Shown piece by piece: positions 16,174-45,454 of a stretch of 64,000 bases of DNA. Below the pieces are notes generated by a model. That model had not been told where the DNA came from. It did not search any database and was given only the letters and a program-made list of their open reading frames with translations. The position numbers and the translations under genes were made by a program. The stretch lies in IMG/VR virus record IMGVR_UViG_3300035156_000206, positions 186,001 through 250,000 of that record; one strand, 5' to 3'. How positions within the stretch are numbered: position 1 is the stretch's first letter; each line of letters starts with the position of its first letter.

Positions 16174-16628
16174 GTCTGATCGACCGATTAGGCGAGAATG
16201 CTGCAGGACTGCCAGGAATTGTTGATGAGTACGAGGAGCACCTTAGTGGTGCTGCTCGGCATCTCAACATGAAGGGGAAGACAGCCCAAGAAGCAAACGC
16301 CGAACATGCAACATGGCTGTACTTTTACGACCAGAAACGAATTGAGCTGTACATCCTAAAGAAGCACATGGAAAAGGAAGTATCCCGCATCAGAGGTAAA
16401 CTCTGGAAGGAATACACCGAAACACACTCTCGTGAACTGAACGCTCGTGACAAGGACAATTATATCAACCAGGAGAAAGCTTTCCTGAACAAGGACGAGT
16501 TGATGCTGATTGTGCAAGAACTTCATGATCATTACCAAGCCGTAGTCGACGCATTCAAAGCTCGTGGCTATGCCTTGAACAACATCACGAAGCTGCGCAC
16601 CAGTGCAATCGAAAACGATGTCATCTAA
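16170..16628 (+). CDS. uvsY: Recombination mediator UvsY-like
   Basis: Helical ~150-aa protein with Y.E...R.L...D...YI..E and AF..RG..L.NI motifs; lies between uvsX and uvsW. Confidence 0.75.
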   Translation: MSLIDRLGENAAGLPGIVDEYEEHLSGAARHLNMKGKTAQEANAEHATWLYFYDQKRIELYILKKHMEKEVSRIRGKLWKEYTETHSRELNARDKDNYINQEKAFLNKDELMLIVQELHDHYQAVVDAFKARGYALNNITKLRTSAIENDVI

Positions 16629-18123
16629 AAGAACAACCTGCTACATCAAAATTGAGGATGAGGTCAACTGTTTAATCACTGGCCTCCATCCAACCGACGA
16701 ATTAAAGCTGTACAACCAATACGGCTTATTCGCACCGAATCACTTTTTCAACCCACGCTTTAAACTGGGCATCTGGGATGGCAAGCTCCGATTCTTTCAG
16801 AAGTCGGGGCAAACCCTCGTGTATCTGTTGGATGAGATCATTCCAAAGCTCGTCAAGATGGGCTATTCGCCAGAGATCAAGGACCAGCGCAAAGGTCCCT
16901 ATGTCAATGCGAAGAACATTACCAAAGATGTGTTTGCTCATGTACTGAAGGGTGACACACCAATGGAACTGCGTTACTACCAAGTAGATGCAGTGAATGC
17001 CTTGCTGGCTGAAGGCAAGGGAATGATCGAAGCGTCTACCAGTGCTGGTAAGACATGGATCAATGCTGCACTCGTCAATGCATACGGATTGGAAGGGCTG
17101 CGCACAATTACGATCGTGCCTAGTACATCACTGGTCATTCAAACGATCAAGGACTTTCGGGATGCTGGGTTAGACGTAGGTGAGTACACCGGCAAAACAA
17201 AAGACCTTGAGCACCAGCACATTATCTCAACTTGGCAAGCACTGAAGAACCACCCAGAGATTATGCACAACTTCCAGGTTGTTGTCGTCGATGAAGTGCA
17301 CCAAGCAAAGAGTAAGATCCTCAATGAGCTGGTGAACATCCATGGAGCCAACACTCCGTACCGCTTTGGCTTGACTGGTACCTTGCCTAAAGATCCAGTG
17401 GAACGATTGACAATTCACAATGCCTTTGGTGAAGTGAAGTATACAATCCCAGCACACGAGCTAATTGAGCAGGACTATATTTCCTCAGTGGAAGTAACAA
17501 TCGCACAATTGTTTGAGAATCATCCGAAAGGCTACTTCCCAGACTTCACAGCTGAAAAGTCCTACCTACAGATCCGCAAGGAACGTCTGGAGTGGATTGC
17601 TGACAAGGTGATTGAGCGAGCGGCTCTACCCAAAGGTAATGCAATGGTTCTGGTGTCAAGCGTTGGCATCGGTAAGAAGTTGCAGAAGCTGATCCCAAAT
17701 TCGATCTTCTTGCATGGTACGGATAGTGCCGAAGACCGGAAGAAGGTATACGACCTGTTTGAGACGAACGACAACATGACCGTCATAGCGACAGTTCAGA
17801 TTGCTGGTACCGGTTTGAGTATTGACCGCATCTTCAACCTGTTCCTAATCGACATCGGTAAGTCATTCACTCGCGTGATTCAGGCGATCGGACGAGGCCT
17901 ACGTCGCAATAGTAGCGATAAAGACCACGTCAATGTGTTTGACATTTGCAGCAACCTCAAGTATAGTAAGAACCACTTGCTGATGCGAATCCAGTACTAC
18001 ACGGATGCAAAGTACCCGTTCACTAAGAATGTTGTAAAATACCGCAACTACGATGACAAGTTCAGCGAGACGCAGGATGACATTTTAAAGCAGATCGAAA
18101 GTGAAACATCGCTTGACTATTGA
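16618..18123 (+). CDS. uvsW: SF2 DNA helicase UvsW
   Basis: LRYYQ, STSAGKT, VVDEVH, GLTGT, GTGLSI and QAIGRGLR helicase motifs. Confidence 0.92.
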   Translation: MSSKRTTCYIKIEDEVNCLITGLHPTDELKLYNQYGLFAPNHFFNPRFKLGIWDGKLRFFQKSGQTLVYLLDEIIPKLVKMGYSPEIKDQRKGPYVNAKNITKDVFAHVLKGDTPMELRYYQVDAVNALLAEGKGMIEASTSAGKTWINAALVNAYGLEGLRTITIVPSTSLVIQTIKDFRDAGLDVGEYTGKTKDLEHQHIISTWQALKNHPEIMHNFQVVVVDEVHQAKSKILNELVNIHGANTPYRFGLTGTLPKDPVERLTIHNAFGEVKYTIPAHELIEQDYISSVEVTIAQLFENHPKGYFPDFTAEKSYLQIRKERLEWIADKVIERAALPKGNAMVLVSSVGIGKKLQKLIPNSIFLHGTDSAEDRKKVYDLFETNDNMTVIATVQIAGTGLSIDRIFNLFLIDIGKSFTRVIQAIGRGLRRNSSDKDHVNVFDICSNLKYSKNHLLMRIQYYTDAKYPFTKNVVKYRNYDDKFSETQDDILKQIESETSLDY

Positions 18124-18867: not shown

Positions 18868-19207
18868 CGGAGTCACTCTAGCAGAGTTCCGCGCTTGGCT
18901 GCAAGGTGTAGAAGAAATGCAAGGTGCTGATTGGGCCCCTTCCGCTGAACAGTGGCGTAAGATCAAAGCTAAGTTCAATGATATCGTAGAAGAGGAAGCT
19001 TCTGCCCCTGTATTGGCACCACAGGGGCACACTCTACGCCAGCCGTATCAGCCACCACCATTCCAACAATTTGCACCAGGAACGATGCCAGCGCCGGAAC
19101 GTCCATCAATGCCTCAGCCACTCCCACAAGGATTGCAGTCAGGACTTGGCGGAACAAAGACGCCTGATATCGATTCGACAAACGGTTACTCATCGAGCCT
19201 CGTATGA
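18845..19207 (+). CDS. Hypothetical protein (EFRAWLQGVEEMQ N-domain, Pro/Gln-rich tail)
   Basis: AAGGAG RBS before ATG 18845. Confidence 0.65.
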   Translation: MAKKKATDGVTLAEFRAWLQGVEEMQGADWAPSAEQWRKIKAKFNDIVEEEASAPVLAPQGHTLRQPYQPPPFQQFAPGTMPAPERPSMPQPLPQGLQSGLGGTKTPDIDSTNGYSSSLV

Positions 19208-19671
19208 AATACTTTGAATGTCCAGCCATCTTCCGATCCTCCTTGCATGACGACTTCTGTGTCTTCATGGGTGGAGGAATCACCGGATGCCCAGATTGGC
19301 AAGCCGACGCGGTGGACTACCTTAAAGATGTGGCTGACCTCGCATTGGTGAACCCTCGACGTGCAAGCTTCGATGTTACGAATGCCAACATGACAGTTGA
19401 GCAAATTGCATGGGAACATCATCACCTGACCAATGCGGACGCCATCATGTTTTGGTTTCCTTGTGAGACCCTTTGCCCGATCACCCTATTCGAGTTAGGT
19501 GTTTATGCAGCTAAAGGGTACAACATCTTTGTGGGCTGTCATCCTGACTATGCACGCAAGGTTGATGTAATCGAACAGCTGAAGAACCTACGACCAGATG
19601 TCAAAGTGCATCAACACTTGCATAACATGCTTGATGATGTACACGAACGCGTTAAGGCCATATTCGGATGA
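19204..19671 (+). CDS. Nucleoside 2-deoxyribosyltransferase-like protein
   Basis: FMGGGITGCPDWQ, NPRR, QIAWE, IMFWFP.ETLCPITLFELG motifs. Confidence 0.85.
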   Translation: MKYFECPAIFRSSLHDDFCVFMGGGITGCPDWQADAVDYLKDVADLALVNPRRASFDVTNANMTVEQIAWEHHHLTNADAIMFWFPCETLCPITLFELGVYAAKGYNIFVGCHPDYARKVDVIEQLKNLRPDVKVHQHLHNMLDDVHERVKAIFG

Positions 19672-20201
19672 AGACACAGCTCAAGTCATACGAACTTTGG
19701 TATGATGGGGACGTGGTAATTAAGGCCAATGACATCGAACGGTTCATTACTAAAGTACCAAGTAATAAGCTGTTCGTTGACAAGGTCACTAAAGATATCA
19801 AGCAGTTCAATGCTCTGATGTCACGAGACGATGCGATCACAACCAAAGAAGAATGCAAGCCACTCAACTTTGATTGGGACCTACCTGAGTATTATTTGAC
19901 CCTAGACGTAAAGTCACATGTGTTGCGTAAGCTTGAGCAGGAAAAGCTGACATCTGATGAAGAGCTGGAAGAACGGTTTGCACGCGTTTTGACGGAGGTT
20001 AAAGCGTTTGCCAAACTTAACTTGATCAATCTGCTACGTTGCCTGATTTATATCGTGGATACGTTTACCAAATGTGGCATCGTTTGGGGAGTGGGTCGTG
20101 GAAGTAGCGTTTCGTCGTATGTCCTGTATCTCATTGGGGTTCATGACATTGACAGCGTGCAATTTGAGCTGCCATTCACAGATTTTGTGAAACACGAGTA
20201 A
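19668..20201 (+). CDS. DNA polymerase III alpha (DnaE)-like, N-terminal fragment
   Basis: GVGRGSSVSSYVLYLIGVHDIDSVQFELPFTDF corresponds to the DnaE GxGRGS...L.F.RF segment. Confidence 0.85.
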   Translation: MKTQLKSYELWYDGDVVIKANDIERFITKVPSNKLFVDKVTKDIKQFNALMSRDDAITTKEECKPLNFDWDLPEYYLTLDVKSHVLRKLEQEKLTSDEELEERFARVLTEVKAFAKLNLINLLRCLIYIVDTFTKCGIVWGVGRGSSVSSYVLYLIGVHDIDSVQFELPFTDFVKHE

Positions 20202-20202
20202 G

Positions 20203-20227
20203 TATTTATGTTTTCAGGACATAAATA
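20203..20227 (+). promoter_or_regulatory. Late promoter TAAATA (20222-27) within an 8-bp inverted repeat
   Basis: TATTTATG...CATAAATA; AGGAG RBS and ORF 20256 follow. Confidence 0.55.
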
Positions 20228-20255
20228 GGCGATAGAACTTTATAGGAGCAGCTCC

Positions 20256-20471
20256 ATGACAAAGATGGTACGTAGCGCACGAGGCGATTTGGTCGACTTC
20301 GATTTAATCAAACTCAAGCAACAACTGGCAGACGCGCCAGCCCCAACCGAAGTAGCGGCCAGGGAGAATTTCGTCGAGAAGCGTCTCAAGCGCAAACTCA
20401 GAACTAAAACCGTGCCAGCAGTTACACCTGTTGGCAAAGATGAATCAGAAAAAGAGGAAGCATCAGAATGA
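20256..20471 (+). CDS. Small hypothetical protein
   Basis: 71 aa with an AGGAG RBS; coupled to groES. Confidence 0.6.
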   Translation: MTKMVRSARGDLVDFDLIKLKQQLADAPAPTEVAARENFVEKRLKRKLRTKTVPAVTPVGKDESEKEEASE

Positions 20472-20758
20472 ATGTAACAACAATGCGCAACAACATCCTG
20501 TTCCACTTCAAGGACAAAGTCAAAGACGGCAAGTTCGTCGAAGTCACTGAATCAGGATTGTATCTGGGTTTCCAGGCAGTCGACAGCAGCCAGAAGCCGC
20601 GCGAAGGGATTGTCCTCGTTGTTGGTCCAAAGTGCACTGACGTCAAGGTGGGTGATACTATCCTGATCGAACCACTGAAGTGGACTGAGGAAACAAAGTT
20701 TGGTGGCGAGAAGTTTTGGCTCACTACCGAAGACAATGTAATTGGTATCGTGACCTAA
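20468..20758 (+). CDS. groES: Co-chaperonin GroES-like (capsid assembly chaperone)
   Basis: TESGLYL mobile loop, REGIVLVVGP..DVKVGD..L motifs; 96 aa. Confidence 0.8.
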   Translation: MNVTTMRNNILFHFKDKVKDGKFVEVTESGLYLGFQAVDSSQKPREGIVLVVGPKCTDVKVGDTILIEPLKWTEETKFGGEKFWLTTEDNVIGIVT

Positions 20759-20769
20759 AAAGAGAGCCT

Positions 20770-22233
20770 ATGTTATTCATCGCCTTAATGCTTATAACCA
20801 CCACCTGCGTTGCAGGAGCTGCTGCATTCTTCAGTGTGTACGGGCTTGCCCACACATTTGCTGCTTCGTTCTGGTCTGTTGTATTCATGGGCGGTTCTCT
20901 GGAGGCTGGCAAACTAATGCTGGCCTCCTATTTGTACCGTTTCAAGGATGCAATAACCTACAAGACCAAAGCTCTTGGTTACGTCTTCGTCGTGGTACTG
21001 ATGCTAATCACATCATTAGGTATCTACGGATATCTTGCTGAGGCGTATCAAGCCGGCTCTACAGACATGAAGCAAGTCAACGCCTCCATGGACCTGAAGA
21101 AGCAGGAGCAGGCAACCCTGCAAAAACGTAAGGGCGAAATTGACGCCCAGATTGCCCAAGTACCTGTAAAGGACGTTCGTGGCAAGCAACGTTTGATGAA
21201 ACAATTTGGACCAGAAGTAAACACCATCAATACCCGCCTGATTGCACTAACATCCGAAGTCCAAGTAGAAGCACAAAAGCAGATCACCACTGATTCACAT
21301 GTGGGACCTATTGTCTTTGTGGCCAAGATTGTTGGCATCGAGCCGGATAATGCAATCAGCTTGCTGATCCTCGCAATTGTGTTCGCATTTGACCCACTTG
21401 CTATCTACCTGACCATTGCATGCAACACAGCAATTGCCAAGTACAAAGCCAAGAAGGCTGAACCCGAAGATGAACCACCAATGGAAGATTATTGGTCAAC
21501 GGACCCCGATCCTGTCCATACTGCAGACTTCAGGAAAGAGTTCGTGGACAAGTTCAAGGCTGATATGGGGGACACTATCCTTGATGTCAAGCTTGCTGAG
21601 CAGCAGGACGACAATCCTGAGCACATCGATCTTCTAATCAAGCCAATCCCAGCTGCTGAATACGTCACCATGCCTCCAATGGGAGACTTGTCAGAGTTTG
21701 TAGAAGTTGATGCTCTTCCTGAGCCACTCACATTCCCTGAGATCGATTTGGACCTGCCTGGTGTCCCACTAGTTGAAGAGGATACTATTCATGTACCAGA
21801 AGAGATTGTGAAACGGGCAGCGGACATTGATGTTGTCGGAGCAACTTTTGATGACAGCATGTCGACCGATGAAGTACACGAGAAGTTCAACCAGCTGGTA
21901 AAAGAATCACGAGCTAGATTGGTTTCTCCTGGTGTACCTGTAATCATGACAGAGGTCAATGAGTGGTGGGATGGGATGAAGCGGCCTCGAGAACCAATCG
22001 CTGACATGAAAGCATTGGGCGAACTTTTCTCGAAAGAGGAAACAGAAGACGTCACTTTCGAAGAAGGTACAGAAGCACCTCCAGTCCAACAACTGGTTAA
22101 AATCTATGAAGAGACTGCAGCGAAAGATGTTGCAGAGCAAACTCCGATGGATATCGAGACGATGGATCGCATCACGCGATTCTTCAAGCGTCAAGAACTT
22201 ATCAAAAATGTTCGCAGTGGTACAGTGGAATAA
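20770..22233 (+). CDS. Membrane protein with three N-terminal TM helices, coiled coil, further TM and long acidic tail
   Basis: AAFFSVYGLA...LEAGKL hydrophobic segments, a coiled coil, VFAFDPLAI, then a D/E/P-rich tail. Confidence 0.7.
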   Translation: MLFIALMLITTTCVAGAAAFFSVYGLAHTFAASFWSVVFMGGSLEAGKLMLASYLYRFKDAITYKTKALGYVFVVVLMLITSLGIYGYLAEAYQAGSTDMKQVNASMDLKKQEQATLQKRKGEIDAQIAQVPVKDVRGKQRLMKQFGPEVNTINTRLIALTSEVQVEAQKQITTDSHVGPIVFVAKIVGIEPDNAISLLILAIVFAFDPLAIYLTIACNTAIAKYKAKKAEPEDEPPMEDYWSTDPDPVHTADFRKEFVDKFKADMGDTILDVKLAEQQDDNPEHIDLLIKPIPAAEYVTMPPMGDLSEFVEVDALPEPLTFPEIDLDLPGVPLVEEDTIHVPEEIVKRAADIDVVGATFDDSMSTDEVHEKFNQLVKESRARLVSPGVPVIMTEVNEWWDGMKRPREPIADMKALGELFSKEETEDVTFEEGTEAPPVQQLVKIYEETAAKDVAEQTPMDIETMDRITRFFKRQELIKNVRSGTVE

Positions 22234-22268
22234 CTGTTGAACCCCTTGGTGGGGACGATACTTCTCAA

Positions 22269-22294
22269 TAAATACCTCCTTCGTGGAGGTATTT
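22269..22294 (+). promoter_or_regulatory. Late promoter overlapping a hairpin that occludes the endonuclease RBS
   Basis: TAAATA (22269-74); AAATACCTCC-TTCGT-GGAGGTATTT 10-bp stem contains GGAGG; TTG start at 22299. Confidence 0.8.
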
Positions 22295-22298
22295 TCTT

Positions 22299-22976
22299 TT
22301 GGCACACATTTACAAAATAACAAACGCGGTTGATGGTAAGGTATATGTAGGCAAGACCAACCGTACGATCAGCAAGCGATTCAAGCTGCATATATCAAAA
22401 CACAACACCGGCACCACTTATTTGTATAGAGCAATGCGGTTGCATGGACTGGCTAACTTTAGTATATCAGAAATTGAAGAAGTGTGTGAAGTGGATGCAT
22501 CAACACGAGAACAGTTCTGGATAGTAAAACTTGGTACCAAAGTACCTTTGGGATATAATATGACAAATGGTGGGGATGGTGGCGACACTAGTGATTCTCC
22601 ACAATTCCAGAAATATTTAGCCAACCGTGACTATCGTGGTGTTAAAAATCCAATGTACGGTAAACGTGGGAAGGAAAATCCCAACTATGGCAGCTGTCGA
22701 TCAGATGAACAGAAGATAAACATGTCAGTTGGGCTGACTACTGCATGGGAAGCAAATGCCGACCGCAAGGACAAACAGTCCAATAAAATGCAAGGTGTGG
22801 GTAACCCCATGTTTGGGAAAAAGCCTAAAAACACCAAACGTGTTGTCTTTGACGGTGTTCTGTACGATAGTATCGCGGACTGCATGAAAGCAACAAAACG
22901 GTCCTCCTATTATATACAACGACACGGGCACATACAACATGACATTACTACACAAGCTTTGGCAGGAGAAATATAG
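22299..22976 (+). mobile_element. Free-standing GIY-YIG homing endonuclease with NUMOD3-like NPMYGK repeats
   Basis: HIYKITN..GKVYVGKT, RF..H, REQFWI, GYNMTNGGDG, and NPMYGK/NPNYG/NPMFGKK. Confidence 0.88.
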
Positions 22977-23874
22977 GCCAACTGAAGTCGAAGACTACCT
23001 TTTCCAGAACAAAGCGCAAAAATCCAAGTTTCTCAAAATGATTCTTGACCAGTCGATTCCACACCTACTGCTTTCGGGTGTGCAAGGAACCGGCAAGACA
23101 TCACTCGCATGGCTGCTGATGAAGCAGATTGGCGTGGATGAAGACGACATCCTGGTAATCGATTGCTCACTGACCACGTCGGTTGATGTAGTCCGAAACG
23201 ACATCGATTGCTTCATCAAGCAGTTTCCAACTGGCGACTTCCGTGTAGTTCTGATGGAAGAAGCGGACCAGTTTACTCCTGCAGCCCAGAAGGCTCTCAA
23301 AGTCACGCTGGAAGAGTATGCCGATGTAGTTCGATTCATCTTCACAACCAATCACGAACAGAAGATTCTGCCAGCAATCAAGTCGCGTTGCACACACGCT
23401 CGCTTCAAAGCACACAATGTCCCGCAAGTGACTAATCTGTGCATGAACATTCTTGAAGCTGAGGGAATGCTGTACGACCCGGACGAAGTGGACAAGTATA
23501 TTGCGTTGTGCTATCCAGACATTCGCAAGACGATTGGCATGTTACAAGATAACTGCCCGAATGGCAAACTGCTTCCAGCTTCGGACTCGACCTCCGAAAA
23601 TTCTGACTATAAGTACAAGATGCTCGAGATGATCGAGAGCGATGCGTGGGATCAATTGCGCATTGAAGTACTGCCAAGCATTGCCACCGAAGAGTGGGAT
23701 GATGCGTACCGGTTCTTGTATGAGAACATCCATCGTAGTCCAAAAATGGTTGAAGATGTAGCGAACATGAAACAAGCGGTTGTCGCAATCGCTGAATATC
23801 TGTATCGTCACTCATTCTTTGCCGACCCCATCATCAATGCCTCTGCCTTGATGATCCGAATCTCCGATATTTAA
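22939..23874 (+). CDS. Sliding-clamp loader large subunit (T4 gp44/RFC-like)
   Basis: LWQEKYRP, GVQGTGKTS, MEEAD, FIFTTN, IKSRC and PDIRKTI motifs. Confidence 0.92.
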   Translation: MTLLHKLWQEKYRPTEVEDYLFQNKAQKSKFLKMILDQSIPHLLLSGVQGTGKTSLAWLLMKQIGVDEDDILVIDCSLTTSVDVVRNDIDCFIKQFPTGDFRVVLMEEADQFTPAAQKALKVTLEEYADVVRFIFTTNHEQKILPAIKSRCTHARFKAHNVPQVTNLCMNILEAEGMLYDPDEVDKYIALCYPDIRKTIGMLQDNCPNGKLLPASDSTSENSDYKYKMLEMIESDAWDQLRIEVLPSIATEEWDDAYRFLYENIHRSPKMVEDVANMKQAVVAIAEYLYRHSFFADPIINASALMIRISDI

Positions 23875-23882
23875 GGAACACC

Positions 23883-24218
23883 ATGAGCACACTTGACGAC
23901 CAAACCGAACAAACCAAAGAAGACCGCGCCATCCTTGAGACGATTGCTGGTCACGCCGTAAAAGGCGAGATCGCTGCCTGGAATCGCAAACGCAAGTCCA
24001 TCGAGCGCATCATTACCAACAACATCCATCCGCTTGAGCAAAAGTTGATCGAGCTGAATGCACAGTTGATGCCACTGTACGATGAGCTGAAGTCGGCCCG
24101 ATCTGCCATGATCGAGTTTTGCATCCACCCTATTGACATGTTGGTCAAAGTTGAAGGCCATGTAGAATGTAAATTCTGTGATGCCAAGATGGTTGTGCCA
24201 GCAAAGGCAGCAGAATAA
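23883..24218 (+). CDS. Hypothetical coiled-coil protein with C-terminal CxH/CxxC
   Basis: 111 aa with an AAGGA RBS; FCIHP...ECKFC. Confidence 0.6.
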   Translation: MSTLDDQTEQTKEDRAILETIAGHAVKGEIAAWNRKRKSIERIITNNIHPLEQKLIELNAQLMPLYDELKSARSAMIEFCIHPIDMLVKVEGHVECKFCDAKMVVPAKAAE

Positions 24219-24619
24219 TGAGCATTCGACCACTTAAACTGAAGGATCCTACCCTACCTTCTAACCAACAGGGTATGTACGAGAAGTTTGTTGTTGCTCG
24301 TACTGATGGCAGTGATGAGCCGGGCGGTAAGCATGAAGACTGTGACTACTTTGTGCTTGATCTGACACACGACAAGCATGCTGTAGCTGCACTAGCGGCG
24401 TATGCTGTATCGTGCAAAGATACGCACCCACAGTTACATGCTGATATTACCAAACGGCTCTTCAAGATCATGCCATACACTCGAGAGGATATCCTGGTGG
24501 GTGCATATTCCTTGAACCTCGAAAAAGGTATTGGGTTTGATTCCCTCGAGATGCAAGAGTCCGTCAACAAAACTATGGCTGAATATGATGATCTGGTCGA
24601 AGCGACGAAAAAAGGTTAG
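24218..24619 (+). CDS. Hypothetical phage protein (KF.V.RTDG...GGKH..C.YFVLDL.HD domain)
   Basis: Coupled by a TAATG overlap; the motif resembles a phage domain of unknown function recalled from memory. Confidence 0.65.
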   Translation: MSIRPLKLKDPTLPSNQQGMYEKFVVARTDGSDEPGGKHEDCDYFVLDLTHDKHAVAALAAYAVSCKDTHPQLHADITKRLFKIMPYTREDILVGAYSLNLEKGIGFDSLEMQESVNKTMAEYDDLVEATKKG

Positions 24620-24620
24620 T

Positions 24621-24803
24621 GTGCAGCCACAGGATGACAGTTCTGATATTGTGAAGGAACTGTTCTCTGAGTATATTAGAGCTAGCGTGAGAACCGCAAT
24701 GGCGAAGCTGTATGACAAGGCACAGTATGTACCACGTCTGAAGGAAGAGATGGATGCGTTCAATCTCTTCATGTACCAATTCAAGAGAGAGAACCAAGAC
24801 TAA
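24621..24803 (+). CDS. Small hypothetical protein
   Basis: Probable GTG start just after the preceding stop; coupled to the gp62-like gene. Confidence 0.45.
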   Translation: MQPQDDSSDIVKELFSEYIRASVRTAMAKLYDKAQYVPRLKEEMDAFNLFMYQFKRENQD

Positions 24804-25288
24804 TGAGCGAAGACACAAAAGCCAGGCCTCTTGACATCTTTGAGGCATTGGACCGGATCAACCACAACGACTTCGGCTACTTTGCCACTCTATCGGAAGA
24901 GCAGCAGAAGTCATTCTCACCTTACGTGGCGATGAAGTGGATGCAAGGTACCAACAAGAAGAAGCAACTGGTTCGCCTGAACAACCGCGTCAATCCGTAC
25001 GTGTTTGCTTTAGGCAACAATCACAAGCAGTTGATGTTCATGCTGATGTGCTCCTGCACTGAAGGCAATGGGCAACGTTACACATGGTCCAAAGGATCTA
25101 CAAAGGCACCTGCCAAGGCACATTCCGTTGGAGTGATCATGGAAGCCTACAAGTACACACAGAAGCAAGCGCGTGAAGTACTTCATATGTTCAATATGGA
25201 CGAAATATTAGAACTGGCACAATACCTCGGAAGACAAACGGATGAGCTTACAAAAATTAAGTCTGAACACAAATCAAAGTCAAAATAG
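24803..25288 (+). CDS. Clamp loader small subunit (T4 gp62-like)
   Basis: FSPYVAMKWM...N..VN, Y.W.K, Y.Y....A.E.L pattern; near gp44. Confidence 0.75.
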   Translation: MSEDTKARPLDIFEALDRINHNDFGYFATLSEEQQKSFSPYVAMKWMQGTNKKKQLVRLNNRVNPYVFALGNNHKQLMFMLMCSCTEGNGQRYTWSKGSTKAPAKAHSVGVIMEAYKYTQKQAREVLHMFNMDEILELAQYLGRQTDELTKIKSEHKSKSK

Positions 25289-25295
25289 AGTCCCA

Positions 25296-25988
25296 ATGCC
25301 ACTGATCGCAAAAGAGAAGCCAGTTTACGAGTGCACGTGGTGTAAGAAAAACTACACGCGCGAGAAGGCTTTCATGGAACACAAGTGCCCTGTCCGTGCT
25401 CGGATGGAGCAACTGCGTTCGCCTCTTGGTCAGGCAGCATATATGTTCTATGCAAAGTGGATGCACGCTTCAAAGCGAGCTATCCCTGAACAGGCAACAT
25501 TCATGACATCCAAGTTCTACGAATCGTTTATTCGGTTTGCCAAGTTCAACAAGGCTCTGCAGTTGCCATCGACTGAGCTGTACGTGCAAGTGATGATGCA
25601 AAAAGACATCCCTCCTAACCTCTGGACGGACGATCGGGCGTATTCCATTTACCTGGAGCATATGGAGTATCACATTGATCCAAAGCTGTCGATCATTATG
25701 ACATCTGAAAGTTTGGCAAAGCTGTGTAAGGAGTATGAATGCGAGATTAGCGATGTTTTCGCTCGTGTTAATAAGAATGATGTTATACAATTGATTCGTG
25801 AGCGAAAGTTGTCGCCTTGGATTCTGTTGCGTAGCCCACGCTTTCACGAGTTCTTGGGTGATTGTTCACGTGAGCAGTTGGCCATGATTGAGACATTGAT
25901 TGATGCTCCGTTCTGGAAGAAGAAGTTTAAGGCTGACCCAAAGACTACCAAGTTTGTTGGCCTCTGCATACAAGAGTTAGGACTGTAA
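25296..25988 (+). CDS. C2H2/C zinc-finger protein
   Basis: YECTWCKKNYTREKAFMEHKC at the N-terminus. Confidence 0.7.
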   Translation: MPLIAKEKPVYECTWCKKNYTREKAFMEHKCPVRARMEQLRSPLGQAAYMFYAKWMHASKRAIPEQATFMTSKFYESFIRFAKFNKALQLPSTELYVQVMMQKDIPPNLWTDDRAYSIYLEHMEYHIDPKLSIIMTSESLAKLCKEYECEISDVFARVNKNDVIQLIRERKLSPWILLRSPRFHEFLGDCSREQLAMIETLIDAPFWKKKFKADPKTTKFVGLCIQELGL

Positions 25989-25989
25989 A

Positions 25990-26568
25990 TTGGATATCGA
26001 CATTGATCTTCCCACCAACTTCGACCCAAAGAAGATTTTCACCAGCGTTAGGGTGGCATCGATGCTGAAGGGTTCGGAATTTGTGAAGCATCCGTGTGGT
26101 GCATACTTCCAAGGCATTGCGGTAGATCCAATAACGGGACTGGCTGCAATTCCCCACAAGGAGGCACAAGACTTAGGCTTCTTCAAGATCGACTTCCTGC
26201 ACCTGAGTGTATTGGATGACTTTACCACAAAGGAACAGATTCGGAAGCTGATGAAGTACAAGCCAGACTGGACCTTGCTAAATAGTCAGGAGGTAGTGGA
26301 GAAGCTCTTCCACATCAAGAACCACTTCGATTTAGTAAATAGGGTAAAGCCTACGTCAGTACAAGAACTGGCAGACATTATGGCATTGATTCGTCCTGGC
26401 AGGCGCCAGCTGGTAGATCAGTACATGATGAACAAGGAAGCTGTACGAAAGAAACAACTGTATGAACGCCAGGCTCATGATGAGTATTCGTTCAAACGCA
26501 GTCACGCAATTGCGTATGCCTACAATGTGGTATTGCAGTTGCACCTAATCAAAAAAGGTCTACTATGA
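25990..26568 (+). CDS. DNA polymerase III alpha (DnaE)-like, catalytic C-terminal fragment
   Basis: Begins MDIDID (PDxDxD), then KHPCG, GFFKIDFL, ALIRPG and YSFKRSHAIAYA, all DnaE motifs. Confidence 0.88.
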   Translation: MDIDIDLPTNFDPKKIFTSVRVASMLKGSEFVKHPCGAYFQGIAVDPITGLAAIPHKEAQDLGFFKIDFLHLSVLDDFTTKEQIRKLMKYKPDWTLLNSQEVVEKLFHIKNHFDLVNRVKPTSVQELADIMALIRPGRRQLVDQYMMNKEAVRKKQLYERQAHDEYSFKRSHAIAYAYNVVLQLHLIKKGLL

Positions 26569-27947: not shown

Positions 27948-28868
27948 ATGAAAAATCCATTCACCGCGATGTTAGCTGAACTGAACATCTCCCTGGGCAA
28001 CAAACTGATCGCTCCTTCCTCGAGCAGTGAAGTTGATGCCCTGAGCGACAAAGAAGAAGACAAAGTAGGTGGTATGGAGTTGCCATCTGACGAAGAGGTC
28101 ACAGACCTTGATGATGCCGAAACAGATCTGAGCAAACTAACACTTGACCAGATTATTGCTGCCCTGCAAGCTATCAAGAAAAGCCAAGAACAAGAGGCTG
28201 ATATTGGTGGTCAACGCATTGAGCCACACAGCGACTTTGCAGATGTGGACCCAATGGATCCTCCTGAGAATGTCAATCCTGCTGACAACCGTATGCCAGA
28301 TGAGAATCTGCTGGACGATGAAGGTATCCCTGCTCTGCCAGGTATGCGTCGTTCCCCAGAAGATGAACAGCTTGCTGGTCCTAAGAAGTCCAATCCTTTT
28401 AGCAACGACGAAGAGGAAGACAATTTGGACGATCCAGAAGGCGCGTCTTTTGATGGCTTTGATGCCGATCCTGAAGGCGATGCTGGTGATGTTGACCTCG
28501 ACAAAGAAGGCGACGATGCCGACCCAGTAGATGACTTCGGAGCTGATGTTACCAAAGGTGAAGACCCGATGGGTGGTGATGACATGGGTGCTGAAGATGA
28601 GCCCGATGAAAACCACATGGGAACTATCCGTGCTGTTAAGGGTGCCCACTTAGTCTACAAGCGCCAAGCTGGTGACGGTACATTCTCTGAGCTGTGGACG
28701 TACAACATTGGCGAACACGTCAATGATGCTATTGCCATCAAAAAAGCTATTGTTGCTGGTACAGATATCCCAGAAAACAAGCTACGTTCAGATGACGGTA
28801 CTCAGTCATATGAGCTGGTCACCATGGGTAATGCTCAGTTGCTGAAAATTACTGGACTGCCTAACTAA
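27948..28868 (+). CDS. Highly acidic late protein, probable internal head protein
   Basis: D/E-rich disordered body with a folded C-terminal ~80 aa; late promoter; MLAE near the N-terminus. Confidence 0.6.
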   Translation: MKNPFTAMLAELNISLGNKLIAPSSSSEVDALSDKEEDKVGGMELPSDEEVTDLDDAETDLSKLTLDQIIAALQAIKKSQEQEADIGGQRIEPHSDFADVDPMDPPENVNPADNRMPDENLLDDEGIPALPGMRRSPEDEQLAGPKKSNPFSNDEEEDNLDDPEGASFDGFDADPEGDAGDVDLDKEGDDADPVDDFGADVTKGEDPMGGDDMGAEDEPDENHMGTIRAVKGAHLVYKRQAGDGTFSELWTYNIGEHVNDAIAIKKAIVAGTDIPENKLRSDDGTQSYELVTMGNAQLLKITGLPN

Positions 28869-29555: not shown

Positions 29556-29672
29556 CATCATAGCAAGGACACCAGTCGAACAAATAATTGGTGTCTTTGT
29601 TCAGAACATGATGTATCATGCGTAGCGTCAGCAGTCTACAAATTGACCAAACATTTGAAAACAGGAAATTAC

Positions 29673-30698
29673 ATGGAATACAACAAAATTCGCAGCACGG
29701 ACTACTCGGAAAAGATGGACGACACCATCTTCACATACGACGAGCAGTTCTACCCACTGGACAGTGACCTACCAGATCCTCAGGTCGATCCTGTGATTCC
29801 TGGCAAGCGTGTCATGATCCAGAAAGTTGGTATTGCTCCAGTCGATCTGCCAGTGAAGTTGCTGCGTCGTGATGGTGGTGTACAGGTTCTCCAGACAGAA
29901 GCATCGCTGTATTGCTCACTGGATGACATGAACGCAAAAGGCCTAAACCTGAGCCGTCTGTATCTGATCATGCACGACACGATCGAAAACCAACTGTCAC
30001 TCGATGGCATCAAGGCAGCTCTGCACAATCTGGCAACCAAGCAAGGTAGCAAGAATGCATACTGCAAGCTGCGCTTCAAGTACCCATGGCATCAGGAAGC
30101 TCTGCGTACCCGTAAGGAACTTGCGGCAATCCCTGAAGGCGCAGTTCACGATCCAATGCTGACGCAGACTCTGTCTGATGGCACTGTGATCAACCGTGAG
30201 AAGATGGTTGGCCACATCGCTTATAAGACCGAGATCGAAGGTCAATACATCGACGGCAAGTACAAGTTCTTCCTGACGGTGGACTATGTGTACTCTTCAA
30301 CTTGCCCATGCAGCTTCGAACTGTCACACAATGCTCGCAACTATCGCAAGCAAGCGGCCAATGCACACAGCCAGCGTTCGATCGCAAAAGTCAAAGTGCA
30401 ATTCAATCCAGACAACGTTGTGTGGGTCGAAGATGTGGTTGAACTGTGCCGTCATCAGATCCCAACGGAAGTTCAGATCGTGGTCAAGCGTCGTGATGAA
30501 CAAGCATTTGCTGAACTGAACGGTTCGAACCTGCTGTTCTCGGAAGACACGGCCCGCCTGTTGTACGAATCACTCGATCAGTGGTACGACTCAGGCAAGA
30601 TCAGCGACTTCAGTGTATCGATCTCCCACGAAGAGTCGTTGCACCCATGGAACGCAATCGCGGTTGTCTACAAAGACATCCCAGGCGGTCTGCGCTAA
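29673..30698 (+). CDS. folE2: GTP cyclohydrolase IB (FolE2)
   Basis: IQKVGI..V.LPV, SSTCPCS.ELS, AHSQRS, KR.DEQ.FAE and HEESLH motifs. Confidence 0.92.
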   Translation: MEYNKIRSTDYSEKMDDTIFTYDEQFYPLDSDLPDPQVDPVIPGKRVMIQKVGIAPVDLPVKLLRRDGGVQVLQTEASLYCSLDDMNAKGLNLSRLYLIMHDTIENQLSLDGIKAALHNLATKQGSKNAYCKLRFKYPWHQEALRTRKELAAIPEGAVHDPMLTQTLSDGTVINREKMVGHIAYKTEIEGQYIDGKYKFFLTVDYVYSSTCPCSFELSHNARNYRKQAANAHSQRSIAKVKVQFNPDNVVWVEDVVELCRHQIPTEVQIVVKRRDEQAFAELNGSNLLFSEDTARLLYESLDQWYDSGKISDFSVSISHEESLHPWNAIAVVYKDIPGGLR

Positions 30699-30742: not shown

Positions 30743-31222
30743 ATGTCAGAAGTAAAGAAACCAATTTATGTCAGTACGAAAACTTACGGTGCTGAGCGTG
30801 GATTCGCAGTAGCATACCGTCAGTTCAAAGCAGAAAGCCATTGCAACCTAATTCACGGTTATGCGATGGGCTTCCACTTTGAGTTCGAGTCGACCGAACT
30901 AGACGTGCGCAATTGGGTAGTTGACTTTGGCTCACTGAAGACTCTCAAAGAAAAGCTGGACGACTGGTTCGATCATACGTGCCTTGTTGCAACAGACGAT
31001 CCAGAGATCGAGCTGTTCAAGGAAATGCACAAGCGTAAGCTGATCAAGATGGTCGAAGTTGAGCGTACTGGCTGCGAAGGCCTGGCAACGTTCCTCGCAG
31101 AGTACATCAACGAAATCTGGATGGAAGAGAATGGATACCACGGGCGCGTGAAGCTGCGCAAGGTGGAAGTCCGCGAAACCCCAAGCAATTCGGCCATGTG
31201 GCTGAATCCAGACCGCGCTTAA
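30743..31222 (+). CDS. queD: 6-carboxy-5,6,7,8-tetrahydropterin synthase QueD
   Basis: HCNLIHGY (CxxxHG), WVVDFG, FDH and VEVRETPSN motifs. Confidence 0.9.
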   Translation: MSEVKKPIYVSTKTYGAERGFAVAYRQFKAESHCNLIHGYAMGFHFEFESTELDVRNWVVDFGSLKTLKEKLDDWFDHTCLVATDDPEIELFKEMHKRKLIKMVEVERTGCEGLATFLAEYINEIWMEENGYHGRVKLRKVEVRETPSNSAMWLNPDRA

Positions 31223-34386: not shown

Positions 34387-34646
34387 AAACGATCATTCAC
34401 GTCAACCAACACGTCATCAAGTCGAACCGTAAGGATGGGGTGAATGATCCTGTTCTTACAGTCAAGACCTACAAGGACAACACATACGCGCACAGCGTCG
34501 AAATCAAAGGCGATAGCAAGGTGGTATATAGCCCTGACAAGCCTTTGAGTTGTGGGGCCCACGTATGGATTGAGACCCATGCAGAGGTTATCTGCCACCT
34601 AAACCCAACAGAAGAAGAAAATGAAAAAACGACCAGCAATGTTTGA
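34383..34646 (+). CDS. Hypothetical phage protein (IIHVNQH.I...P.LTVK...PLSCGA.VWIET)
   Basis: 87 aa; motif familiar from phage hypotheticals; function unknown. Confidence 0.7.
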   Translation: MKTIIHVNQHVIKSNRKDGVNDPVLTVKTYKDNTYAHSVEIKGDSKVVYSPDKPLSCGAHVWIETHAEVICHLNPTEEENEKTTSNV

Positions 34647-35244
34647 CCTAGTCCTGGCACTAGATTCTGAAACGTCCGGAATTGCCATGGGCTCTCTTGA
34701 TCCCACTTACAGGTCCGATCCGGGCGTGGGTGCCGAACGGTACCAAGCCGTATCCTTTGGACTGATTGTGGCAGATGTCCACACTCTGAAACCTATCGAT
34801 TCGTTGTACGTCGAGATTAAGCACGATGACAACTACTACAATTGGTCCGATGGCGCTGAGCGAGTGCACGGCCTGTCCCGTGAATACCTGGAAGCTAACG
34901 GCATGTCACTGGTTGACGCCGCCACTAAAATCCTGAACTTCATCGAAAAGTACTTCGGTCCGTATCAGGCAATCCGTAAGCTGCCAATGCTCGGCCACAA
35001 CGTAGCCACATTCGACCGCTACTTTTTGCATGACCTACTGAGCCACATCGACGTTGAGATCCAATTCGGCAATCGACACATCGATACGTTCTCGCTGGGT
35101 GTAGTTCTGATGGATCTATTTTCTTCGGATGAACTGTTTGACTTTTTCGAACTAAAGCGTGATGCTGAGAAGCATAATGCACTTGATGATGCGAAGTATG
35201 CTCTCAAGGTGGCTCGTCTGATGAAAAAGAACTTCCAAGCCTAA
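34639..35244 (+). CDS. DEDDh 3'-5' exonuclease (DnaQ/epsilon-like)
   Basis: LDSETSG, GHNVATFD, IDT and HNALDDA motifs. Confidence 0.88.
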   Translation: MFDLVLALDSETSGIAMGSLDPTYRSDPGVGAERYQAVSFGLIVADVHTLKPIDSLYVEIKHDDNYYNWSDGAERVHGLSREYLEANGMSLVDAATKILNFIEKYFGPYQAIRKLPMLGHNVATFDRYFLHDLLSHIDVEIQFGNRHIDTFSLGVVLMDLFSSDELFDFFELKRDAEKHNALDDAKYALKVARLMKKNFQA

Positions 35245-42077: not shown

Positions 42078-42095
42078 TCGTGATAAATACCACGA
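42078..42095 (+). promoter_or_regulatory. Late promoter TAAATA (42084-89) in a small hairpin loop
   Basis: TCGTG-ATAAATAC-CACGA upstream of the collagen fibre ATG at 42122. Confidence 0.6.
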
Positions 42096-42121
42096 TCAAT
42101 ACTAGAACGGAGCAAAAATTA

Positions 42122-45454
<3,333 letters not shown>

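What the first reader, a model, noticed from the sequence alone, without database searches (positions are those of the whole stretch)
19668..26568. Minimal DNA Pol III alpha core encoded as two separate genes 5.8 kb apart, without inteins
Seen: ORF 19668 (177 aa) ends right after the GRGS...F.DF segment, and ORF 25990 (192 aa) begins at DIDID and carries KIDFL and SHAIAY. The split lies exactly between the ERF-like and PDxD motifs. All three catalytic Asp fall in the second piece, and the PHP, OB and clamp-binding domains are absent. Both pieces flank the clamp-loader genes. Similar fragments are, as I recall, annotated in some T4-like jumbo phages, with function untested. Inference: a heterodimeric nucleotidyltransferase (primer synthesis/extension, repair, or incorporation of modified nucleotides).
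Basis: partly seen in the sequence, partly recalled or inferred. Interest (0 to 1): 0.6.

Follow-up and report, generated by a model that had tools for sequence, protein, structure and literature searches.

The report
Split minimal Pol III alpha polymerase
An uncultivated giant phage from a soil-crust metagenome encodes the catalytic heart of the bacterial replicative DNA polymerase (Pol III alpha) as two small separate proteins that very probably reassemble into one enzyme; this arrangement was already described by comparative genomics in 2021, but nobody has yet tested what it does.

Summary
ORF A (19668-20201, 177 aa) holds the N-terminal half of the Pol III alpha palm, including GRGS. ORF B (25990-26568, 192 aa) starts at the catalytic DxD strand and holds all three catalytic Asp plus a cut-down fingers core. 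There is no thumb, PHP, OB or clamp-binding domain, and no intein. The genome has a complete family-B polymerase elsewhere.

The split is ancient and under selection. Both pieces form large families of fixed length with invariant catalytic residues. They co-occur in every complete relative checked, 4-244 kb apart and never adjacent. Synonymous sites are saturated against a relative while the proteins stay 77-84% identical.

A controlled complex prediction supports a heterodimer (ipSAE 0.90, best control 0.00). Rare natural fusions exist in both orders (A-B and B-A).

The kind is not new. Iyer et al. 2021 (PMC7824862) described this "minimal, split Pol III alpha" as a marker of group 2.2 jumbo phages. 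Added here:
- the controlled complex test;
- a 69-residue N-terminal strap domain on piece A;
- the fusions;
- spacing statistics;
- conserved neighbours.

Function is untested. The best guess is an accessory, distributive template-dependent DNA polymerase working alongside PolB.

The parts
19668..20201 (+). Piece A, 177 aa. Residues 1-69 are a phage-specific N-terminal domain. Residues 70-177 are the N-terminal half of the Pol III alpha palm (the NTP-binding half).
   Evidence: PF07733 E 1.7e-10. phrog_11127 E 1e-36. Profile aligns to E. coli alpha 311-393. AF2 pLDDT 90.5. VIA Z 12-13.8 to E. coli alpha 279-395. 2498 homologues of 173-215 aa. The ATG overlaps the upstream stop as ATGA.
19668..19874 (+). 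N-terminal domain of piece A (residues 1-69, conserved LWYDGD motif). It has no counterpart in bacterial alpha and is predicted to clasp residues 40-55 of piece B.
   Evidence: No Pol III alpha match for model residues 1-69. D13 and G14 are invariant in the domain, and W70 is invariant at its boundary with the palm half. Interface residues are A 3-16, 29-34 and 66-72 against B 40-55 and 62-65. The domain is absent from the divergent fusions P0368 and P0387.
20094..20105 (+). GRGS motif (A residues 143-146), the triphosphate-binding loop equivalent to E. coli alpha R362-G363-S364.
   Evidence: Invariant in 50 of 50 aligned sequences. Alignment to E. coli alpha. Coordinates verified.
25990..26568 (+). 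Piece B, 192 aa. It is the C-terminal half of the palm, carrying all three catalytic Asp, plus a reduced fingers core. There is no thumb.
   Evidence: phrog_11778 E 1e-61. PF17657 23.2 bits. AF2 pLDDT 90.9. Foldseek top hits are all Pol III alpha. VIA Z 10.7 with 191 residues on Taq alpha 462-840. 1344 homologues of about 188-200 aa.
25993..26007 (+). DIDID strand (B residues 2-6). D2 and D4 correspond to E. coli D401/D403 and Taq D463/D465.
   Evidence: D2, D4 and D6 are invariant. Structural register B1 = Taq 462 = E. coli 400. The strand pairs with A W140-G141 in the complex model.
26185..26193 (+). KID (B residues 66-68). K66 and D68 correspond to Taq K616 and D618; D68 is the third catalytic Asp.
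   Evidence: Invariant. HMM alignment to Taq alpha.
26392..26517 (+). Fingers motifs: IRPG (R135-P136) and SHAIAY (residues 171-176).
   Evidence: R135, P136, H172 and Y176 are invariant. They align to Taq LYRPGP 696-701 and SHAAAY 816-821.
20468..20758 (+). Cpn10/gp31-like co-chaperonin. It is part of the conserved block A - small ORF - Cpn10 - clamp loader.
   Evidence: PF00166 E 2.7e-7. The same order occurs in 121Q, Atu_ph07 and L004; in XacN1 the order is the same, with unannotated small ORFs in the co-chaperonin position.
22299..22976 (+). GIY-YIG / I-TevI-like homing endonuclease lying between the pieces. It is a mobile insertion and not the cause of the split.
   Evidence: PF01541 and PF20987. 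phrog_314. Absent at this position from the syntenic relative L004.
22939..23874 (+). gp44/RFC-like clamp-loader large subunit.
   Evidence: phrog_168 E 5e-62. PF13177 and PF00004.
24803..25288 (+). gp62-like clamp-loader small subunit (weaker assignment).
   Evidence: phrog_225 E 6e-6 and phrog_11758.
25242..25988 (+). phrog_11058 protein with an N-terminal C2H2-like zinc finger. It is a conserved near-upstream neighbour of piece B. Function is unknown, and it is a possible third component.
   Evidence: phrog_11058 E 9e-47. The same family lies 1-2 genes upstream of B in L004, 121Q, GAP32 and Atu_ph07. All relatives are viral.
34621..35244 (+). DEDDh exonuclease, annotated in relatives as 'Pol III epsilon'. 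It is a candidate proofreader, but no link to A/B was tested.
   Evidence: PF00929 E 1e-6. phrog_192. 44% identical to XacN1 ORF223, which lies near piece B there.

Best explanation
Pieces A and B are the two subunits of an obligate heterodimer that rebuilds a minimal C-family (Pol III alpha-type) polymerase catalytic core.

How the parts fit, as predicted:
- Piece A supplies the helical half of the Pol-beta-like palm, with the GRGS triphosphate-binding loop.
- Piece B supplies the beta-strands carrying the three Mg2+-binding aspartates (D2, D4, D68), plus the fingers helices that hold the incoming nucleotide and template (R135, H172, Y176).
- The beta-strand next to GRGS in A (W140-G141) pairs with the N-terminal Asp strand of B, closing the palm sheet.
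- A phage-specific 69-residue N-terminal domain of A clasps a hairpin of B (residues 40-55). It appears to stand in for the missing covalent link.

Likely behaviour and role (inferred): the enzyme has no thumb, PHP, clamp-binding, HhH or OB domain, so it should be distributive. It works next to the phage's complete family-B polymerase, most likely as an accessory template-dependent DNA polymerase in the T4-like replisome, doing gap filling or repair, or extending primers on one strand.

Shown computationally: homology, fold, intact active-site residues, selection, co-occurrence, predicted interface and natural fusions. Inferred only: that it polymerises DNA on a template, and its biological role.
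For: - Homology and fold of both halves to Pol III alpha only.
- Invariant residues. In A: G141, G143, R144, G145, S146 and D162. In B: D2, D4, D6, K66, D68, R135, P136, H172 and Y176.
- Complex prediction: ipSAE 0.90, 0.90 and 0.91 against a best control of 0.00, with 165 contacts, partner pLDDT 91 and at least 97% contact agreement between runs. That mark was reached by 58 of 80 solved complexes and 2 of 110 mismatched pairs.
- Co-occurrence: A was found in 5 of 5 isolate genomes that carry B. It was found in 13 of 17 IMG/VR contigs of at least 100 kb, including 3 of 3 that are at least 90% complete. The 4 misses are 26-40% complete.
- Fusions: P0315, P0391 and P0392 (375-376 aa, A then B, three sources), P0368 (A core then B) and P0387 (B then A core).
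- Selection against L004: pN/pS is 0.151/0.769 for A and 0.102/0.862 for B. That is the same regime as the clamp loader (0.109/0.837) and the helicase (0.075/0.846).
- Replication context. A sits in a conserved block with the clamp loader. B lies by the primase and gp41-type helicase in 121Q, GAP32, Atu_ph07 and Slicko01. The fused forms are translationally coupled to a DnaB/RepA-type AAA_25 helicase (L019) or a PF03090 replicase (L020).
- A complete PolB with exonuclease and polymerase domains is present in the same genome.
- The same reading was published by Iyer et al. 2021.
Against: - There are no biochemical data for any member.
- The palm-palm part of the predicted interface copies intrachain contacts of solved Pol III alpha structures, so that part of the score may come from the model's memory (caveat). 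My own unpaired alignments were used, so the calibration counts hold only roughly.
- The position equivalent to E. coli R390 in the ERF segment is Asp or Glu in the phage family (T-D-F / E-D-F). Nucleotide handling may therefore differ from bacterial alpha.
- Without a thumb or any duplex-binding domain, stable primer-template binding is not assured.
- The neighbourhood evidence is ordinary replication-module synteny and does not single out a role.
Confidence: 0.6

Rival explanations
1. The heterodimer is real but is not a template-copying DNA polymerase. It would be a Pol-beta-superfamily nucleotidyltransferase with another product: untemplated 3' tailing, RNA or NTP use, a nucleotide second messenger, or selective handling of modified dNTPs.
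For: - The thumb and every duplex-binding domain are lost.
- The R390-equivalent position is acidic.
- PolB already covers bulk replication.
- This genome carries FolE2, QueD and QueE-like genes for 7-deazaguanine precursors, but no TGT/DpdA was found.
Against: - The fingers motifs that contact template and incoming nucleotide in bacterial alpha are invariant (R135-P136, H172, Y176).
- The family is present across group 2.2 phages in general.
- The Ndt-like gene coupled to A here is not conserved beyond the close relative.
- All conserved linkage is with replisome genes.
Confidence: 0.2
2. The heterodimer is a dedicated primer-extension or lagging-strand polymerase. It would give the phage a two-polymerase replisome in which the mini Pol III takes over from primase and hands off to PolB, a Pol-alpha-like division of labour.
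For: - Piece B lies a few genes from the primase and gp41-type helicase in 121Q, GAP32, Atu_ph07 and Slicko01.
- Fused forms are translationally coupled to a PF03090 replicase/primase-type gene (L020) or a DnaB/RepA-type helicase (L019) on small contigs.
Against: - T4-type replisomes run both strands with gp43 alone (established knowledge).
- No clamp- or primase-binding motif was identified.
- Gene proximity inside a replication module is weak evidence.
- The fused-form contigs are 3-8 kb singletons whose full gene content is unknown.
Confidence: 0.15
3. The two ORFs are decaying remnants of a captured dnaE gene, broken up by insertions such as the GIY-YIG homing endonuclease, and have no function.
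For: - A homing endonuclease lies between the pieces.
- Most alpha domains are missing.
Against: - The split has identical boundaries in phages of Xanthomonas, Ralstonia, Agrobacterium, Escherichia, Cronobacter and Alishewanella, and in hundreds of metagenomic clusters.
- Catalytic residues are invariant.
- pN is far below pS, as for essential replisome genes.
- The endonuclease is absent from relative L004.
- Both models fold with pLDDT around 91.
Confidence: 0.02
4. The halves are joined after translation by a split intein, or at the RNA level, into one chain.
For: Cyanobacterial DnaE is the classic split-intein protein (established knowledge).
Against: - No Hint or intein family was hit in either ORF.
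- A ends 4 residues after its last palm element and B starts at M-D-I-D, so no intein residues exist.
- Every residue of both models is accounted for by palm, fingers or the N-terminal domain.
- The genes lie 4-244 kb apart in relatives.
Confidence: 0.01

Closest known systems
Split minimal DNA polymerase III alpha of 'group 2.2' jumbo phages (Iyer, Anantharaman, Krishnan, Burroughs and Aravind 2021, Viruses 13:63, PMC7824862)
   Same: - Two standalone proteins from distant genes: an N-terminal NTP-binding half and a C-terminal Mg2+/template-binding half.
- No other Pol III domain is present.
- The genome also carries a family-B polymerase, an RFC-like clamp loader, gp32 and a UvsW-type helicase.
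- The nearest isolates (Xoo-sp13, RsoM2USA, XacN1, Atu_ph07, GAP32, 121Q) belong to the T4-like/Rak2-like jumbo phages; of these, the passages read from the paper name only Atu_ph07 as group 2.2.
   Different: Nothing essential differs; this is another member, from a biocrust metagenome phage. Points not found in that paper's text:
- rare fused and permuted single-chain forms;
- presence in a 141-kb phage that is not a jumbo phage;
- the N-terminal clasp domain of piece A;
- the A - Cpn10 - clamp-loader and phrog_11058 - B neighbourhoods;
- a controlled complex prediction.
Bacterial DnaE / Pol III alpha (E. coli, Taq, M. tuberculosis DnaE1; PDB 2HNH, 2HPI, 3E0D, 5LEW)
   Same: - Pol-beta-like palm with GRGS and three catalytic Asp.
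- Fingers motifs (L/I)RPG and SHAxAY.
- These are the best, and the only significant, fold matches.
   Different: - About 300 core residues replace about 500 (E. coli 279-782).
- There is no PHP, thumb, beta-binding/HhH, OB or tau-binding domain.
- It is encoded as two chains.
- It has an extra 69-residue N-terminal domain.
- The R390-equivalent position is acidic.
- It is not the main replicase, because PolB is present.
Cyanobacterial split DnaE joined by the Npu/Ssp DnaE split intein
   Same: A Pol III alpha encoded by two distant genes.
   Different: In cyanobacteria a full-length alpha is restored by protein trans-splicing, at a site in the fingers. Here there is no intein, the break is inside the palm between the ERF-like segment and the DxD strand, and the halves must associate non-covalently.
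Split family-B DNA polymerases and multi-subunit RNA polymerases of phiKZ-like (group 1) jumbo phages
   Same: The general theme of polymerases broken into separately encoded pieces in jumbo phages (PMC7824862).
   Different: They are an unrelated fold (RRM-like palm or double-psi beta-barrel) in a different phage group, and there the split enzyme is the main polymerase.

Membership tests
Split minimal Pol III alpha of group 2.2 jumbo phages (Iyer et al. 2021) | The N-terminal NTP-binding half and the C-terminal Mg2+/template-binding half are separate proteins from non-adjacent genes | tested here: met
   A is at 19668-20201 and B at 25990-26568, with 5788 bp between them.
Split minimal Pol III alpha of group 2.2 jumbo phages (Iyer et al. 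2021) | No other Pol III alpha domain (PHP, beta-binding, OB) in the genome | tested here: met
   There is no PF02811 hit, and only one PF07733 and one PF17657 hit in the 292-kb record. The record is estimated 84% complete, so absence is not absolute.
Split minimal Pol III alpha of group 2.2 jumbo phages (Iyer et al. 2021) | Accompanied by a family-B polymerase and T4-like replisome genes (RFC-like clamp loader, gp32) | tested here: met
   PolB of 898 aa with PF03104 and PF00136. Clamp loader. gp32 at 13585-14547. UvsW-type helicase at 16603-18123.
Split minimal Pol III alpha of group 2.2 jumbo phages (Iyer et al. 2021) | Sequence membership in the phage-specific families of both halves | tested here: met
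   phrog_11127 E 1e-36 and phrog_11778 E 1e-61, both full length. Best tblastn hits are Xoo-sp13, RsoM2USA and XacN1.
Canonical C-family replicative polymerase (DnaE/PolC) | Pol-beta-like palm with GS-type triphosphate loop and three catalytic Asp | tested here: met
   GRGS, D2, D4 and D68 are invariant and structurally in register with E. coli and Taq alpha.
Canonical C-family replicative polymerase (DnaE/PolC) | N-terminal PHP domain | tested here: not met
   No PF02811 anywhere in the genome. Residues 1-69 of A have no PHP or Pol III alpha match.
Canonical C-family replicative polymerase (DnaE/PolC) | Thumb domain between the DxD strand and the third Asp | tested here: not met
   64 residues separate D4 and D68, against about 150 in E. 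coli (D403-D555) and Taq (D465-D618). The 192 residues of B span Taq 462-840.
Canonical C-family replicative polymerase (DnaE/PolC) | Beta-clamp-binding / HhH domain and C-terminal OB fold | tested here: not met
   B ends at the equivalent of E. coli residue ~782 / Taq ~840. No further Pfam hits were found.
Canonical C-family replicative polymerase (DnaE/PolC) | Template-directed DNA synthesis activity | not testable with these tools
   This needs biochemistry. No published assay was found.
Split-intein DnaE | Hint/intein halves at the junction ends of the two proteins | tested here: not met
   No intein family hit. The termini carry no extra residues.

The most novel reading that the evidence does not exclude
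The mini Pol III alpha heterodimer is a second, dedicated replisome polymerase. It would extend primers from the phage primase, or fill lagging-strand gaps, and hand over to PolB. That would give these phages a two-polymerase division of labour built from a C-family and a B-family enzyme. The roughly 300-residue core, also found fused in either order beside replicase or helicase genes on small elements, would be the smallest functional C-family polymerase.
Probability: 0.2. Interest if true: 0.8.

Novelty: new member of a known kind. Interest (0 to 1): 0.4.

Why it matters
C-family polymerases are the main replicases of bacteria and are known only as enzymes of more than 900 residues with several domains. 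If active, a roughly 300-residue core that assembles from two chains would have several consequences.
- It would define the minimal catalytic unit of the family.
- It would give a tractable model for how the Pol-beta-like palm of Pol III works and evolved.
- It would raise the question of why hundreds of large T4-like phages keep a second polymerase, from the "bacterial" lineage, next to an "archaeo-eukaryotic" PolB.

The system is abundant: 595 representatives at 50% identity for piece B alone. It is present in cultivable E. coli, Xanthomonas and Agrobacterium phages, so the open question can be tested directly. For this window the value is confirmatory, because the kind was published in 2021.

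Tried and rejected
- **Near-identical DNA in the phage collection:** no match. The genome is an uncultivated IMG/VR record.
- **Second Pol III piece, PHP or family-A polymerase in the genome:** none found.
- **GIY-YIG endonuclease as the cause of the split:** rejected. It is absent from syntenic relative L004, and the split is universal.
- **Ndt-like gene (19204-19671) as a functional partner of A:** it is translationally coupled to A here, but the gene upstream of A in XacN1, Atu_ph07 and 121Q has no such domain. Rejected.
- **Link to 7-deazaguanine DNA modification:** FolE2, QueD and QueE-like genes are present, but no QueC or TGT/DpdA was found. No link between these genes and the A/B family was shown. 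Not supported.
- **C-terminal 'QLHLI' of B as a clamp-binding motif:** rejected. It lies inside the conserved fingers helix (residues 170-188 in the model), which falls within the stretch that superposes on E. coli alpha up to residue 782.
- **dN/dS proper:** synonymous sites against the closest relative are saturated (pS 0.77-0.86). Only pN/pS could be given, with no dS estimate.
- **Relatives of the fused forms in IMG/VR:** none. The 188-aa ORFs flanking L019 and L020 are unrelated to each other.
- **Expression evidence:** only DNA runs from biocrust metagenomes hold the stretch, with no RNA run.
- **N-terminal domain of A:** Its weak Z of about 2 to EndoMS/NucS is not meaningful.
- **Limits of the exhaustive search:** only the top 150 of the 595 representatives are visible. 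More fused or intermediate forms may exist among the weaker hits.

Full report
**1. What is in the window**

The window is bases 186001-250000 of a 291,967-bp IMG/VR virus record estimated 84% complete. Its DNA is held in a biocrust metagenome. It has no near-identical relative among 50,697 deposited phage genomes.

ORF A (19668-20201, +, 177 aa) starts at an ATG that overlaps the stop of the upstream gene as ATGA.

ORF B (25990-26568, +, 192 aa) starts at a TTG with AGGA about 8 nt upstream, directly after the stop of the preceding gene.

Between them lie:
- a small ORF;
- a Cpn10-like co-chaperonin (20468-20758);
- a 505-aa membrane protein;
- a GIY-YIG/I-TevI-like homing endonuclease (22299-22976);
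- the gp44-like (22939-23874) and gp62-like (24803-25288) clamp-loader subunits;
- a zinc-finger protein of family phrog_11058 (25242-25988).

**2. Are they Pol III alpha pieces?**

Yes.

Piece A matches PF07733 positions 5-96 of 260, at 41.4 bits against a gathering score of 23.9. A 50-sequence profile of A aligns to E. coli alpha 311-393. This puts A's R144-G145-S146 on R362-G363-S364 and A's C-terminal F-T-D-F on F388-E-R-F391. The AF2 model of A (pLDDT 90.5) finds only Pol III alpha and PolC in the PDB. Its residues 70-177 superpose on E. coli alpha 279-395 with Z 12-13.8 and rmsd 2.1-2.7 A.

Residues 1-69 of A have no counterpart in any solved alpha.

For piece B the Pfam evidence is marginal (PF17657, 23.2 bits against 22). 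Three other results settle it:
- the phage family phrog_11778 matches end to end at E 1e-61;
- the B profile aligns to Taq alpha 609-715 and 809-823;
- the AF2 model (pLDDT 90.9) aligns over 191 of its 192 residues to Taq alpha 462-840 and E. coli alpha 400-782, with Z 10.7 and rmsd 3.2 A.

In that register D2/D4 correspond to E. coli D401/D403 (Taq D463/D465) and D68 to Taq D618 (E. coli D555). Established knowledge identifies these as the three catalytic carboxylates of Pol III alpha.

Only 64 residues separate D4 from D68, against about 150 in the bacterial enzymes. The thumb is therefore deleted, and the fingers are cut down to the helices carrying IRPG and SHAIAY.

The genome has no PHP domain and no further alpha fragment. 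No intein family is hit, and the termini leave no room for one.

**3. Is the split real biology or decay?**

It is real biology.

Piece A has 2498 homologous 90%-identity clusters of 173-215 aa. Piece B has 1344, of about 188-200 aa. In 50-sequence samples the catalytic and nucleotide-binding residues are invariant. The N-terminus of B is always M-D-[IV]-D-[IL]-D.

The closest long relative is L004, a 52-kb Logan contig with the same gene order. Against it, synonymous sites are saturated (pS 0.77 and 0.86) while non-synonymous change is low (pN 0.15 and 0.10). The clamp loader and the UvsW-type helicase next door show the same pattern.

Profile searches found piece A as an intact separate frame in 5 of 5 isolate genomes that carry piece B: 121Q, GAP32, Atu_ph07, XacN1 and Alishewanella phage Slicko01. 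They also found it in 13 of 17 IMG/VR contigs of at least 100 kb that carry B. All 3 of those that are at least 90% complete have it, and the 4 misses are 26-40% complete fragments.

Over 22 genomes the gap between the two genes runs from 4.2 kb to 244 kb, with a median of 12.6 kb. The genes are never adjacent.

The homing endonuclease between the pieces in this window is missing from L004. It is a later insertion, not the cause of the split.

**4. Do the pieces work together?**

The scores were ipSAE 0.90, 0.90 and 0.91 against a best control of 0.00. There were 165 confident contacts, pLDDT was 91/91, and at least 97% of contacts were shared between runs. In the tool's calibration this mark was reached by 58 of 80 solved complexes and 2 of 110 mismatched pairs. 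Because my own alignments were used, those counts hold only roughly.

The tightest contacts pair A W140-G141, the strand leading into GRGS, with B D4-L7, the Asp strand. This closes the palm sheet as in single-chain alpha, so this part of the score could be the model's memory of solved Pol III alpha.

A second contact surface has no solved precedent. The N-terminal domain of A and the linker that follows it (residues 3-16, 29-34 and 66-72) wrap B residues 40-55 and 62-65. Invariant residues sit there on both sides: A D13, G14 and W70, and B Q41, D46 and P55.

Independent support comes from the exhaustive profile search with piece B, which gave 595 representatives at E <= 1e-3. Among the top 150, 147 are standalone B pieces or fragments of them. 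Three are fusions:
- P0315 (375 aa) is A(8-182), a 9-residue linker, then B(191-374). It has two full-length relatives from other sources, P0391 and P0392 (376 aa, 78-81% identity). Its other nearest relatives are standalone B pieces at 51-59% identity, so this fusion is probably secondary.
- P0368 (336 aa) joins only the palm part of A, starting at the equivalent of A residue ~70, to B.
- P0387 (398 aa) has B first and the A palm part after it.

Each fusion reads as one open frame on its contig under the standard code.

Fusions in both orders are what one expects of two modules that dock non-covalently. The two divergent fusions lack the N-terminal domain of A. That fits the idea that this domain is a strap needed mainly when the chains are separate, though this is an inference from two cases.

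**5. Context and likely role**

The genome has a complete PolB with exonuclease and polymerase domains (898 aa). It also has gp32, a clamp loader and a UvsW-type helicase. The mini-alpha is therefore an accessory enzyme, not the main replicase.

Piece A sits in a conserved block: A, a small ORF, a Cpn10-like gene, then the gp44-like clamp loader. The block occurs here and in L004, 121Q and Atu_ph07; XacN1 has the same order, with unannotated small ORFs in the co-chaperonin position.

Piece B has a conserved upstream neighbour of family phrog_11058 here and in L004, 121Q, GAP32 and Atu_ph07. In 121Q, GAP32, Atu_ph07 and Slicko01, B lies a few genes from the primase and gp41-type helicase.

The divergent fusions overlap the stop or start of a PF03090 replicase gene (L020) or an AAA_25 DnaB/RepA-type helicase gene (L019).

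A DEDDh exonuclease (34621-35244) is 44% identical to the XacN1 protein annotated as 'Pol III epsilon'. Genome papers on these phages note it as conserved. Bacterial epsilon binds the PHP domain, which is missing here, and no link between the exonuclease and A/B was tested.

Taken together, the best-supported mechanism is a distributive, template-dependent DNA polymerase acting within the replisome, in repair or gap filling or in primer extension.

One difference from bacterial alpha could bear on substrate handling. The position of E. coli R390 is Asp or Glu throughout the phage family.

A non-polymerase nucleotidyltransferase activity cannot be excluded.

**6. What is known**

Atu_ph07 gp316 and XacN1 ORF245 (piece A) have been annotated as 'DNA polymerase III alpha subunit' since 2018.

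Iyer, Anantharaman, Krishnan, Burroughs and Aravind (Viruses 2021, PMC7824862) recognised both halves. [quoted passage not shown] They presented it as a marker of group 2.2 jumbo phages that accompanies PolB. They proposed that the halves reconstitute an enzyme that cooperates with PolB on one strand or in repair.

Five literature searches found no experimental follow-up.

The window is therefore a new member of a known but uncharacterised kind. Not found in that paper's text, and added here:
- the controlled complex prediction;
- the N-terminal strap domain;
- the fused and permuted forms;
- presence in a 141-kb phage that is not a jumbo phage;
- the spacing statistics;
- the two conserved neighbourhoods.

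**7. Verdict**

- Observation: confirmed.
- Interpretation: supported as far as computation can go.
- Novelty: low for the kind, modest for the added details.
- Interest: 0.4. The enzyme is a curious and testable open problem, but the finding itself repeats a published one.

**Procedural notes**

- No alternative genetic code was used.
- The costly exhaustive protein search was used once, because the 'always split' claim rests on the absence of fused relatives, which the length-limited word search cannot see.

Noticed in passing
L018:1066-2193, L021:519-1649 (fused A-B); L020:3171-4181 (A core-B); L019:871-2067 (B-A core): Rare single-chain versions of the mini Pol III alpha exist in metagenomes, in both domain orders. 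The two divergent ones lack the N-terminal domain of piece A. They overlap a PF03090 replicase gene (L020) or an AAA_25 helicase gene (L019). They are not mentioned in the 2021 paper.
   Followed up: partly
window 29643-30698, 30743-31222, 37625-38524: FolE2-type GTP cyclohydrolase I, QueD/PTPS and a QueE-like radical-SAM protein are the first steps towards 7-deazaguanine (preQ0-type) bases. No QueC and no TGT/DpdA were found in the 84%-complete genome. It is therefore unclear whether and how the DNA is modified. Relative L004 also has FolE2.
   Followed up: partly
window 25242-25988: A 248-aa protein of the virus-only family phrog_11058 has an N-terminal C2H2-like zinc finger. It is conserved 1-2 genes upstream of piece B in distant phages (121Q, GAP32, Atu_ph07, L004). 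Its function is unknown, and it may be another component of the system.
   Followed up: partly
window 22299-22976: A GIY-YIG / I-TevI-like homing endonuclease is inserted just upstream of the clamp-loader gene and overlaps its start by 38 nt. It is absent at this position from the syntenic relative L004.
   Followed up: yes
window 19204-19671: A nucleoside 2-deoxyribosyltransferase-like protein (PF15891, E 7e-20) is translationally coupled (ATGA) to piece A here and in L004. The coupling is not conserved in XacN1, Atu_ph07 or 121Q.
   Followed up: yes
window 36826-37356: A NADAR-domain protein (PF08719, E 5e-45). Members of this family reverse ADP-ribosylation, so it may act against host defence.
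   Followed up: no
window 42080-45454: A 1124-aa protein with many collagen-like and tail-fibre repeat matches (phrog_5073 and phrog_6320, E down to 1e-127).
   Followed up: no
window 27948-28868 and 20716-22233: The first is a 306-aa, extremely acidic, low-complexity protein with no family match. The second is a 505-aa TTG-start protein with N-terminal membrane segments and an acidic tail; its L004 counterpart is 100 aa shorter.
   Followed up: no
L007 / OQ508956.1 (Alishewanella phage vB_AspM_Slicko01): Both mini Pol III alpha pieces occur, 11 kb apart, in a 141-kb phage. That is below the usual 200-kb jumbo threshold, so the system is not restricted to jumbo phages.
   Followed up: partly
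P0194: One piece-B homologue sits on a 48-kb contig that NCBI labels as a Candidatus Thermoplasmatota archaeon MAG. It is probably a phage contig binned into a MAG, but this was not checked.
   Followed up: no
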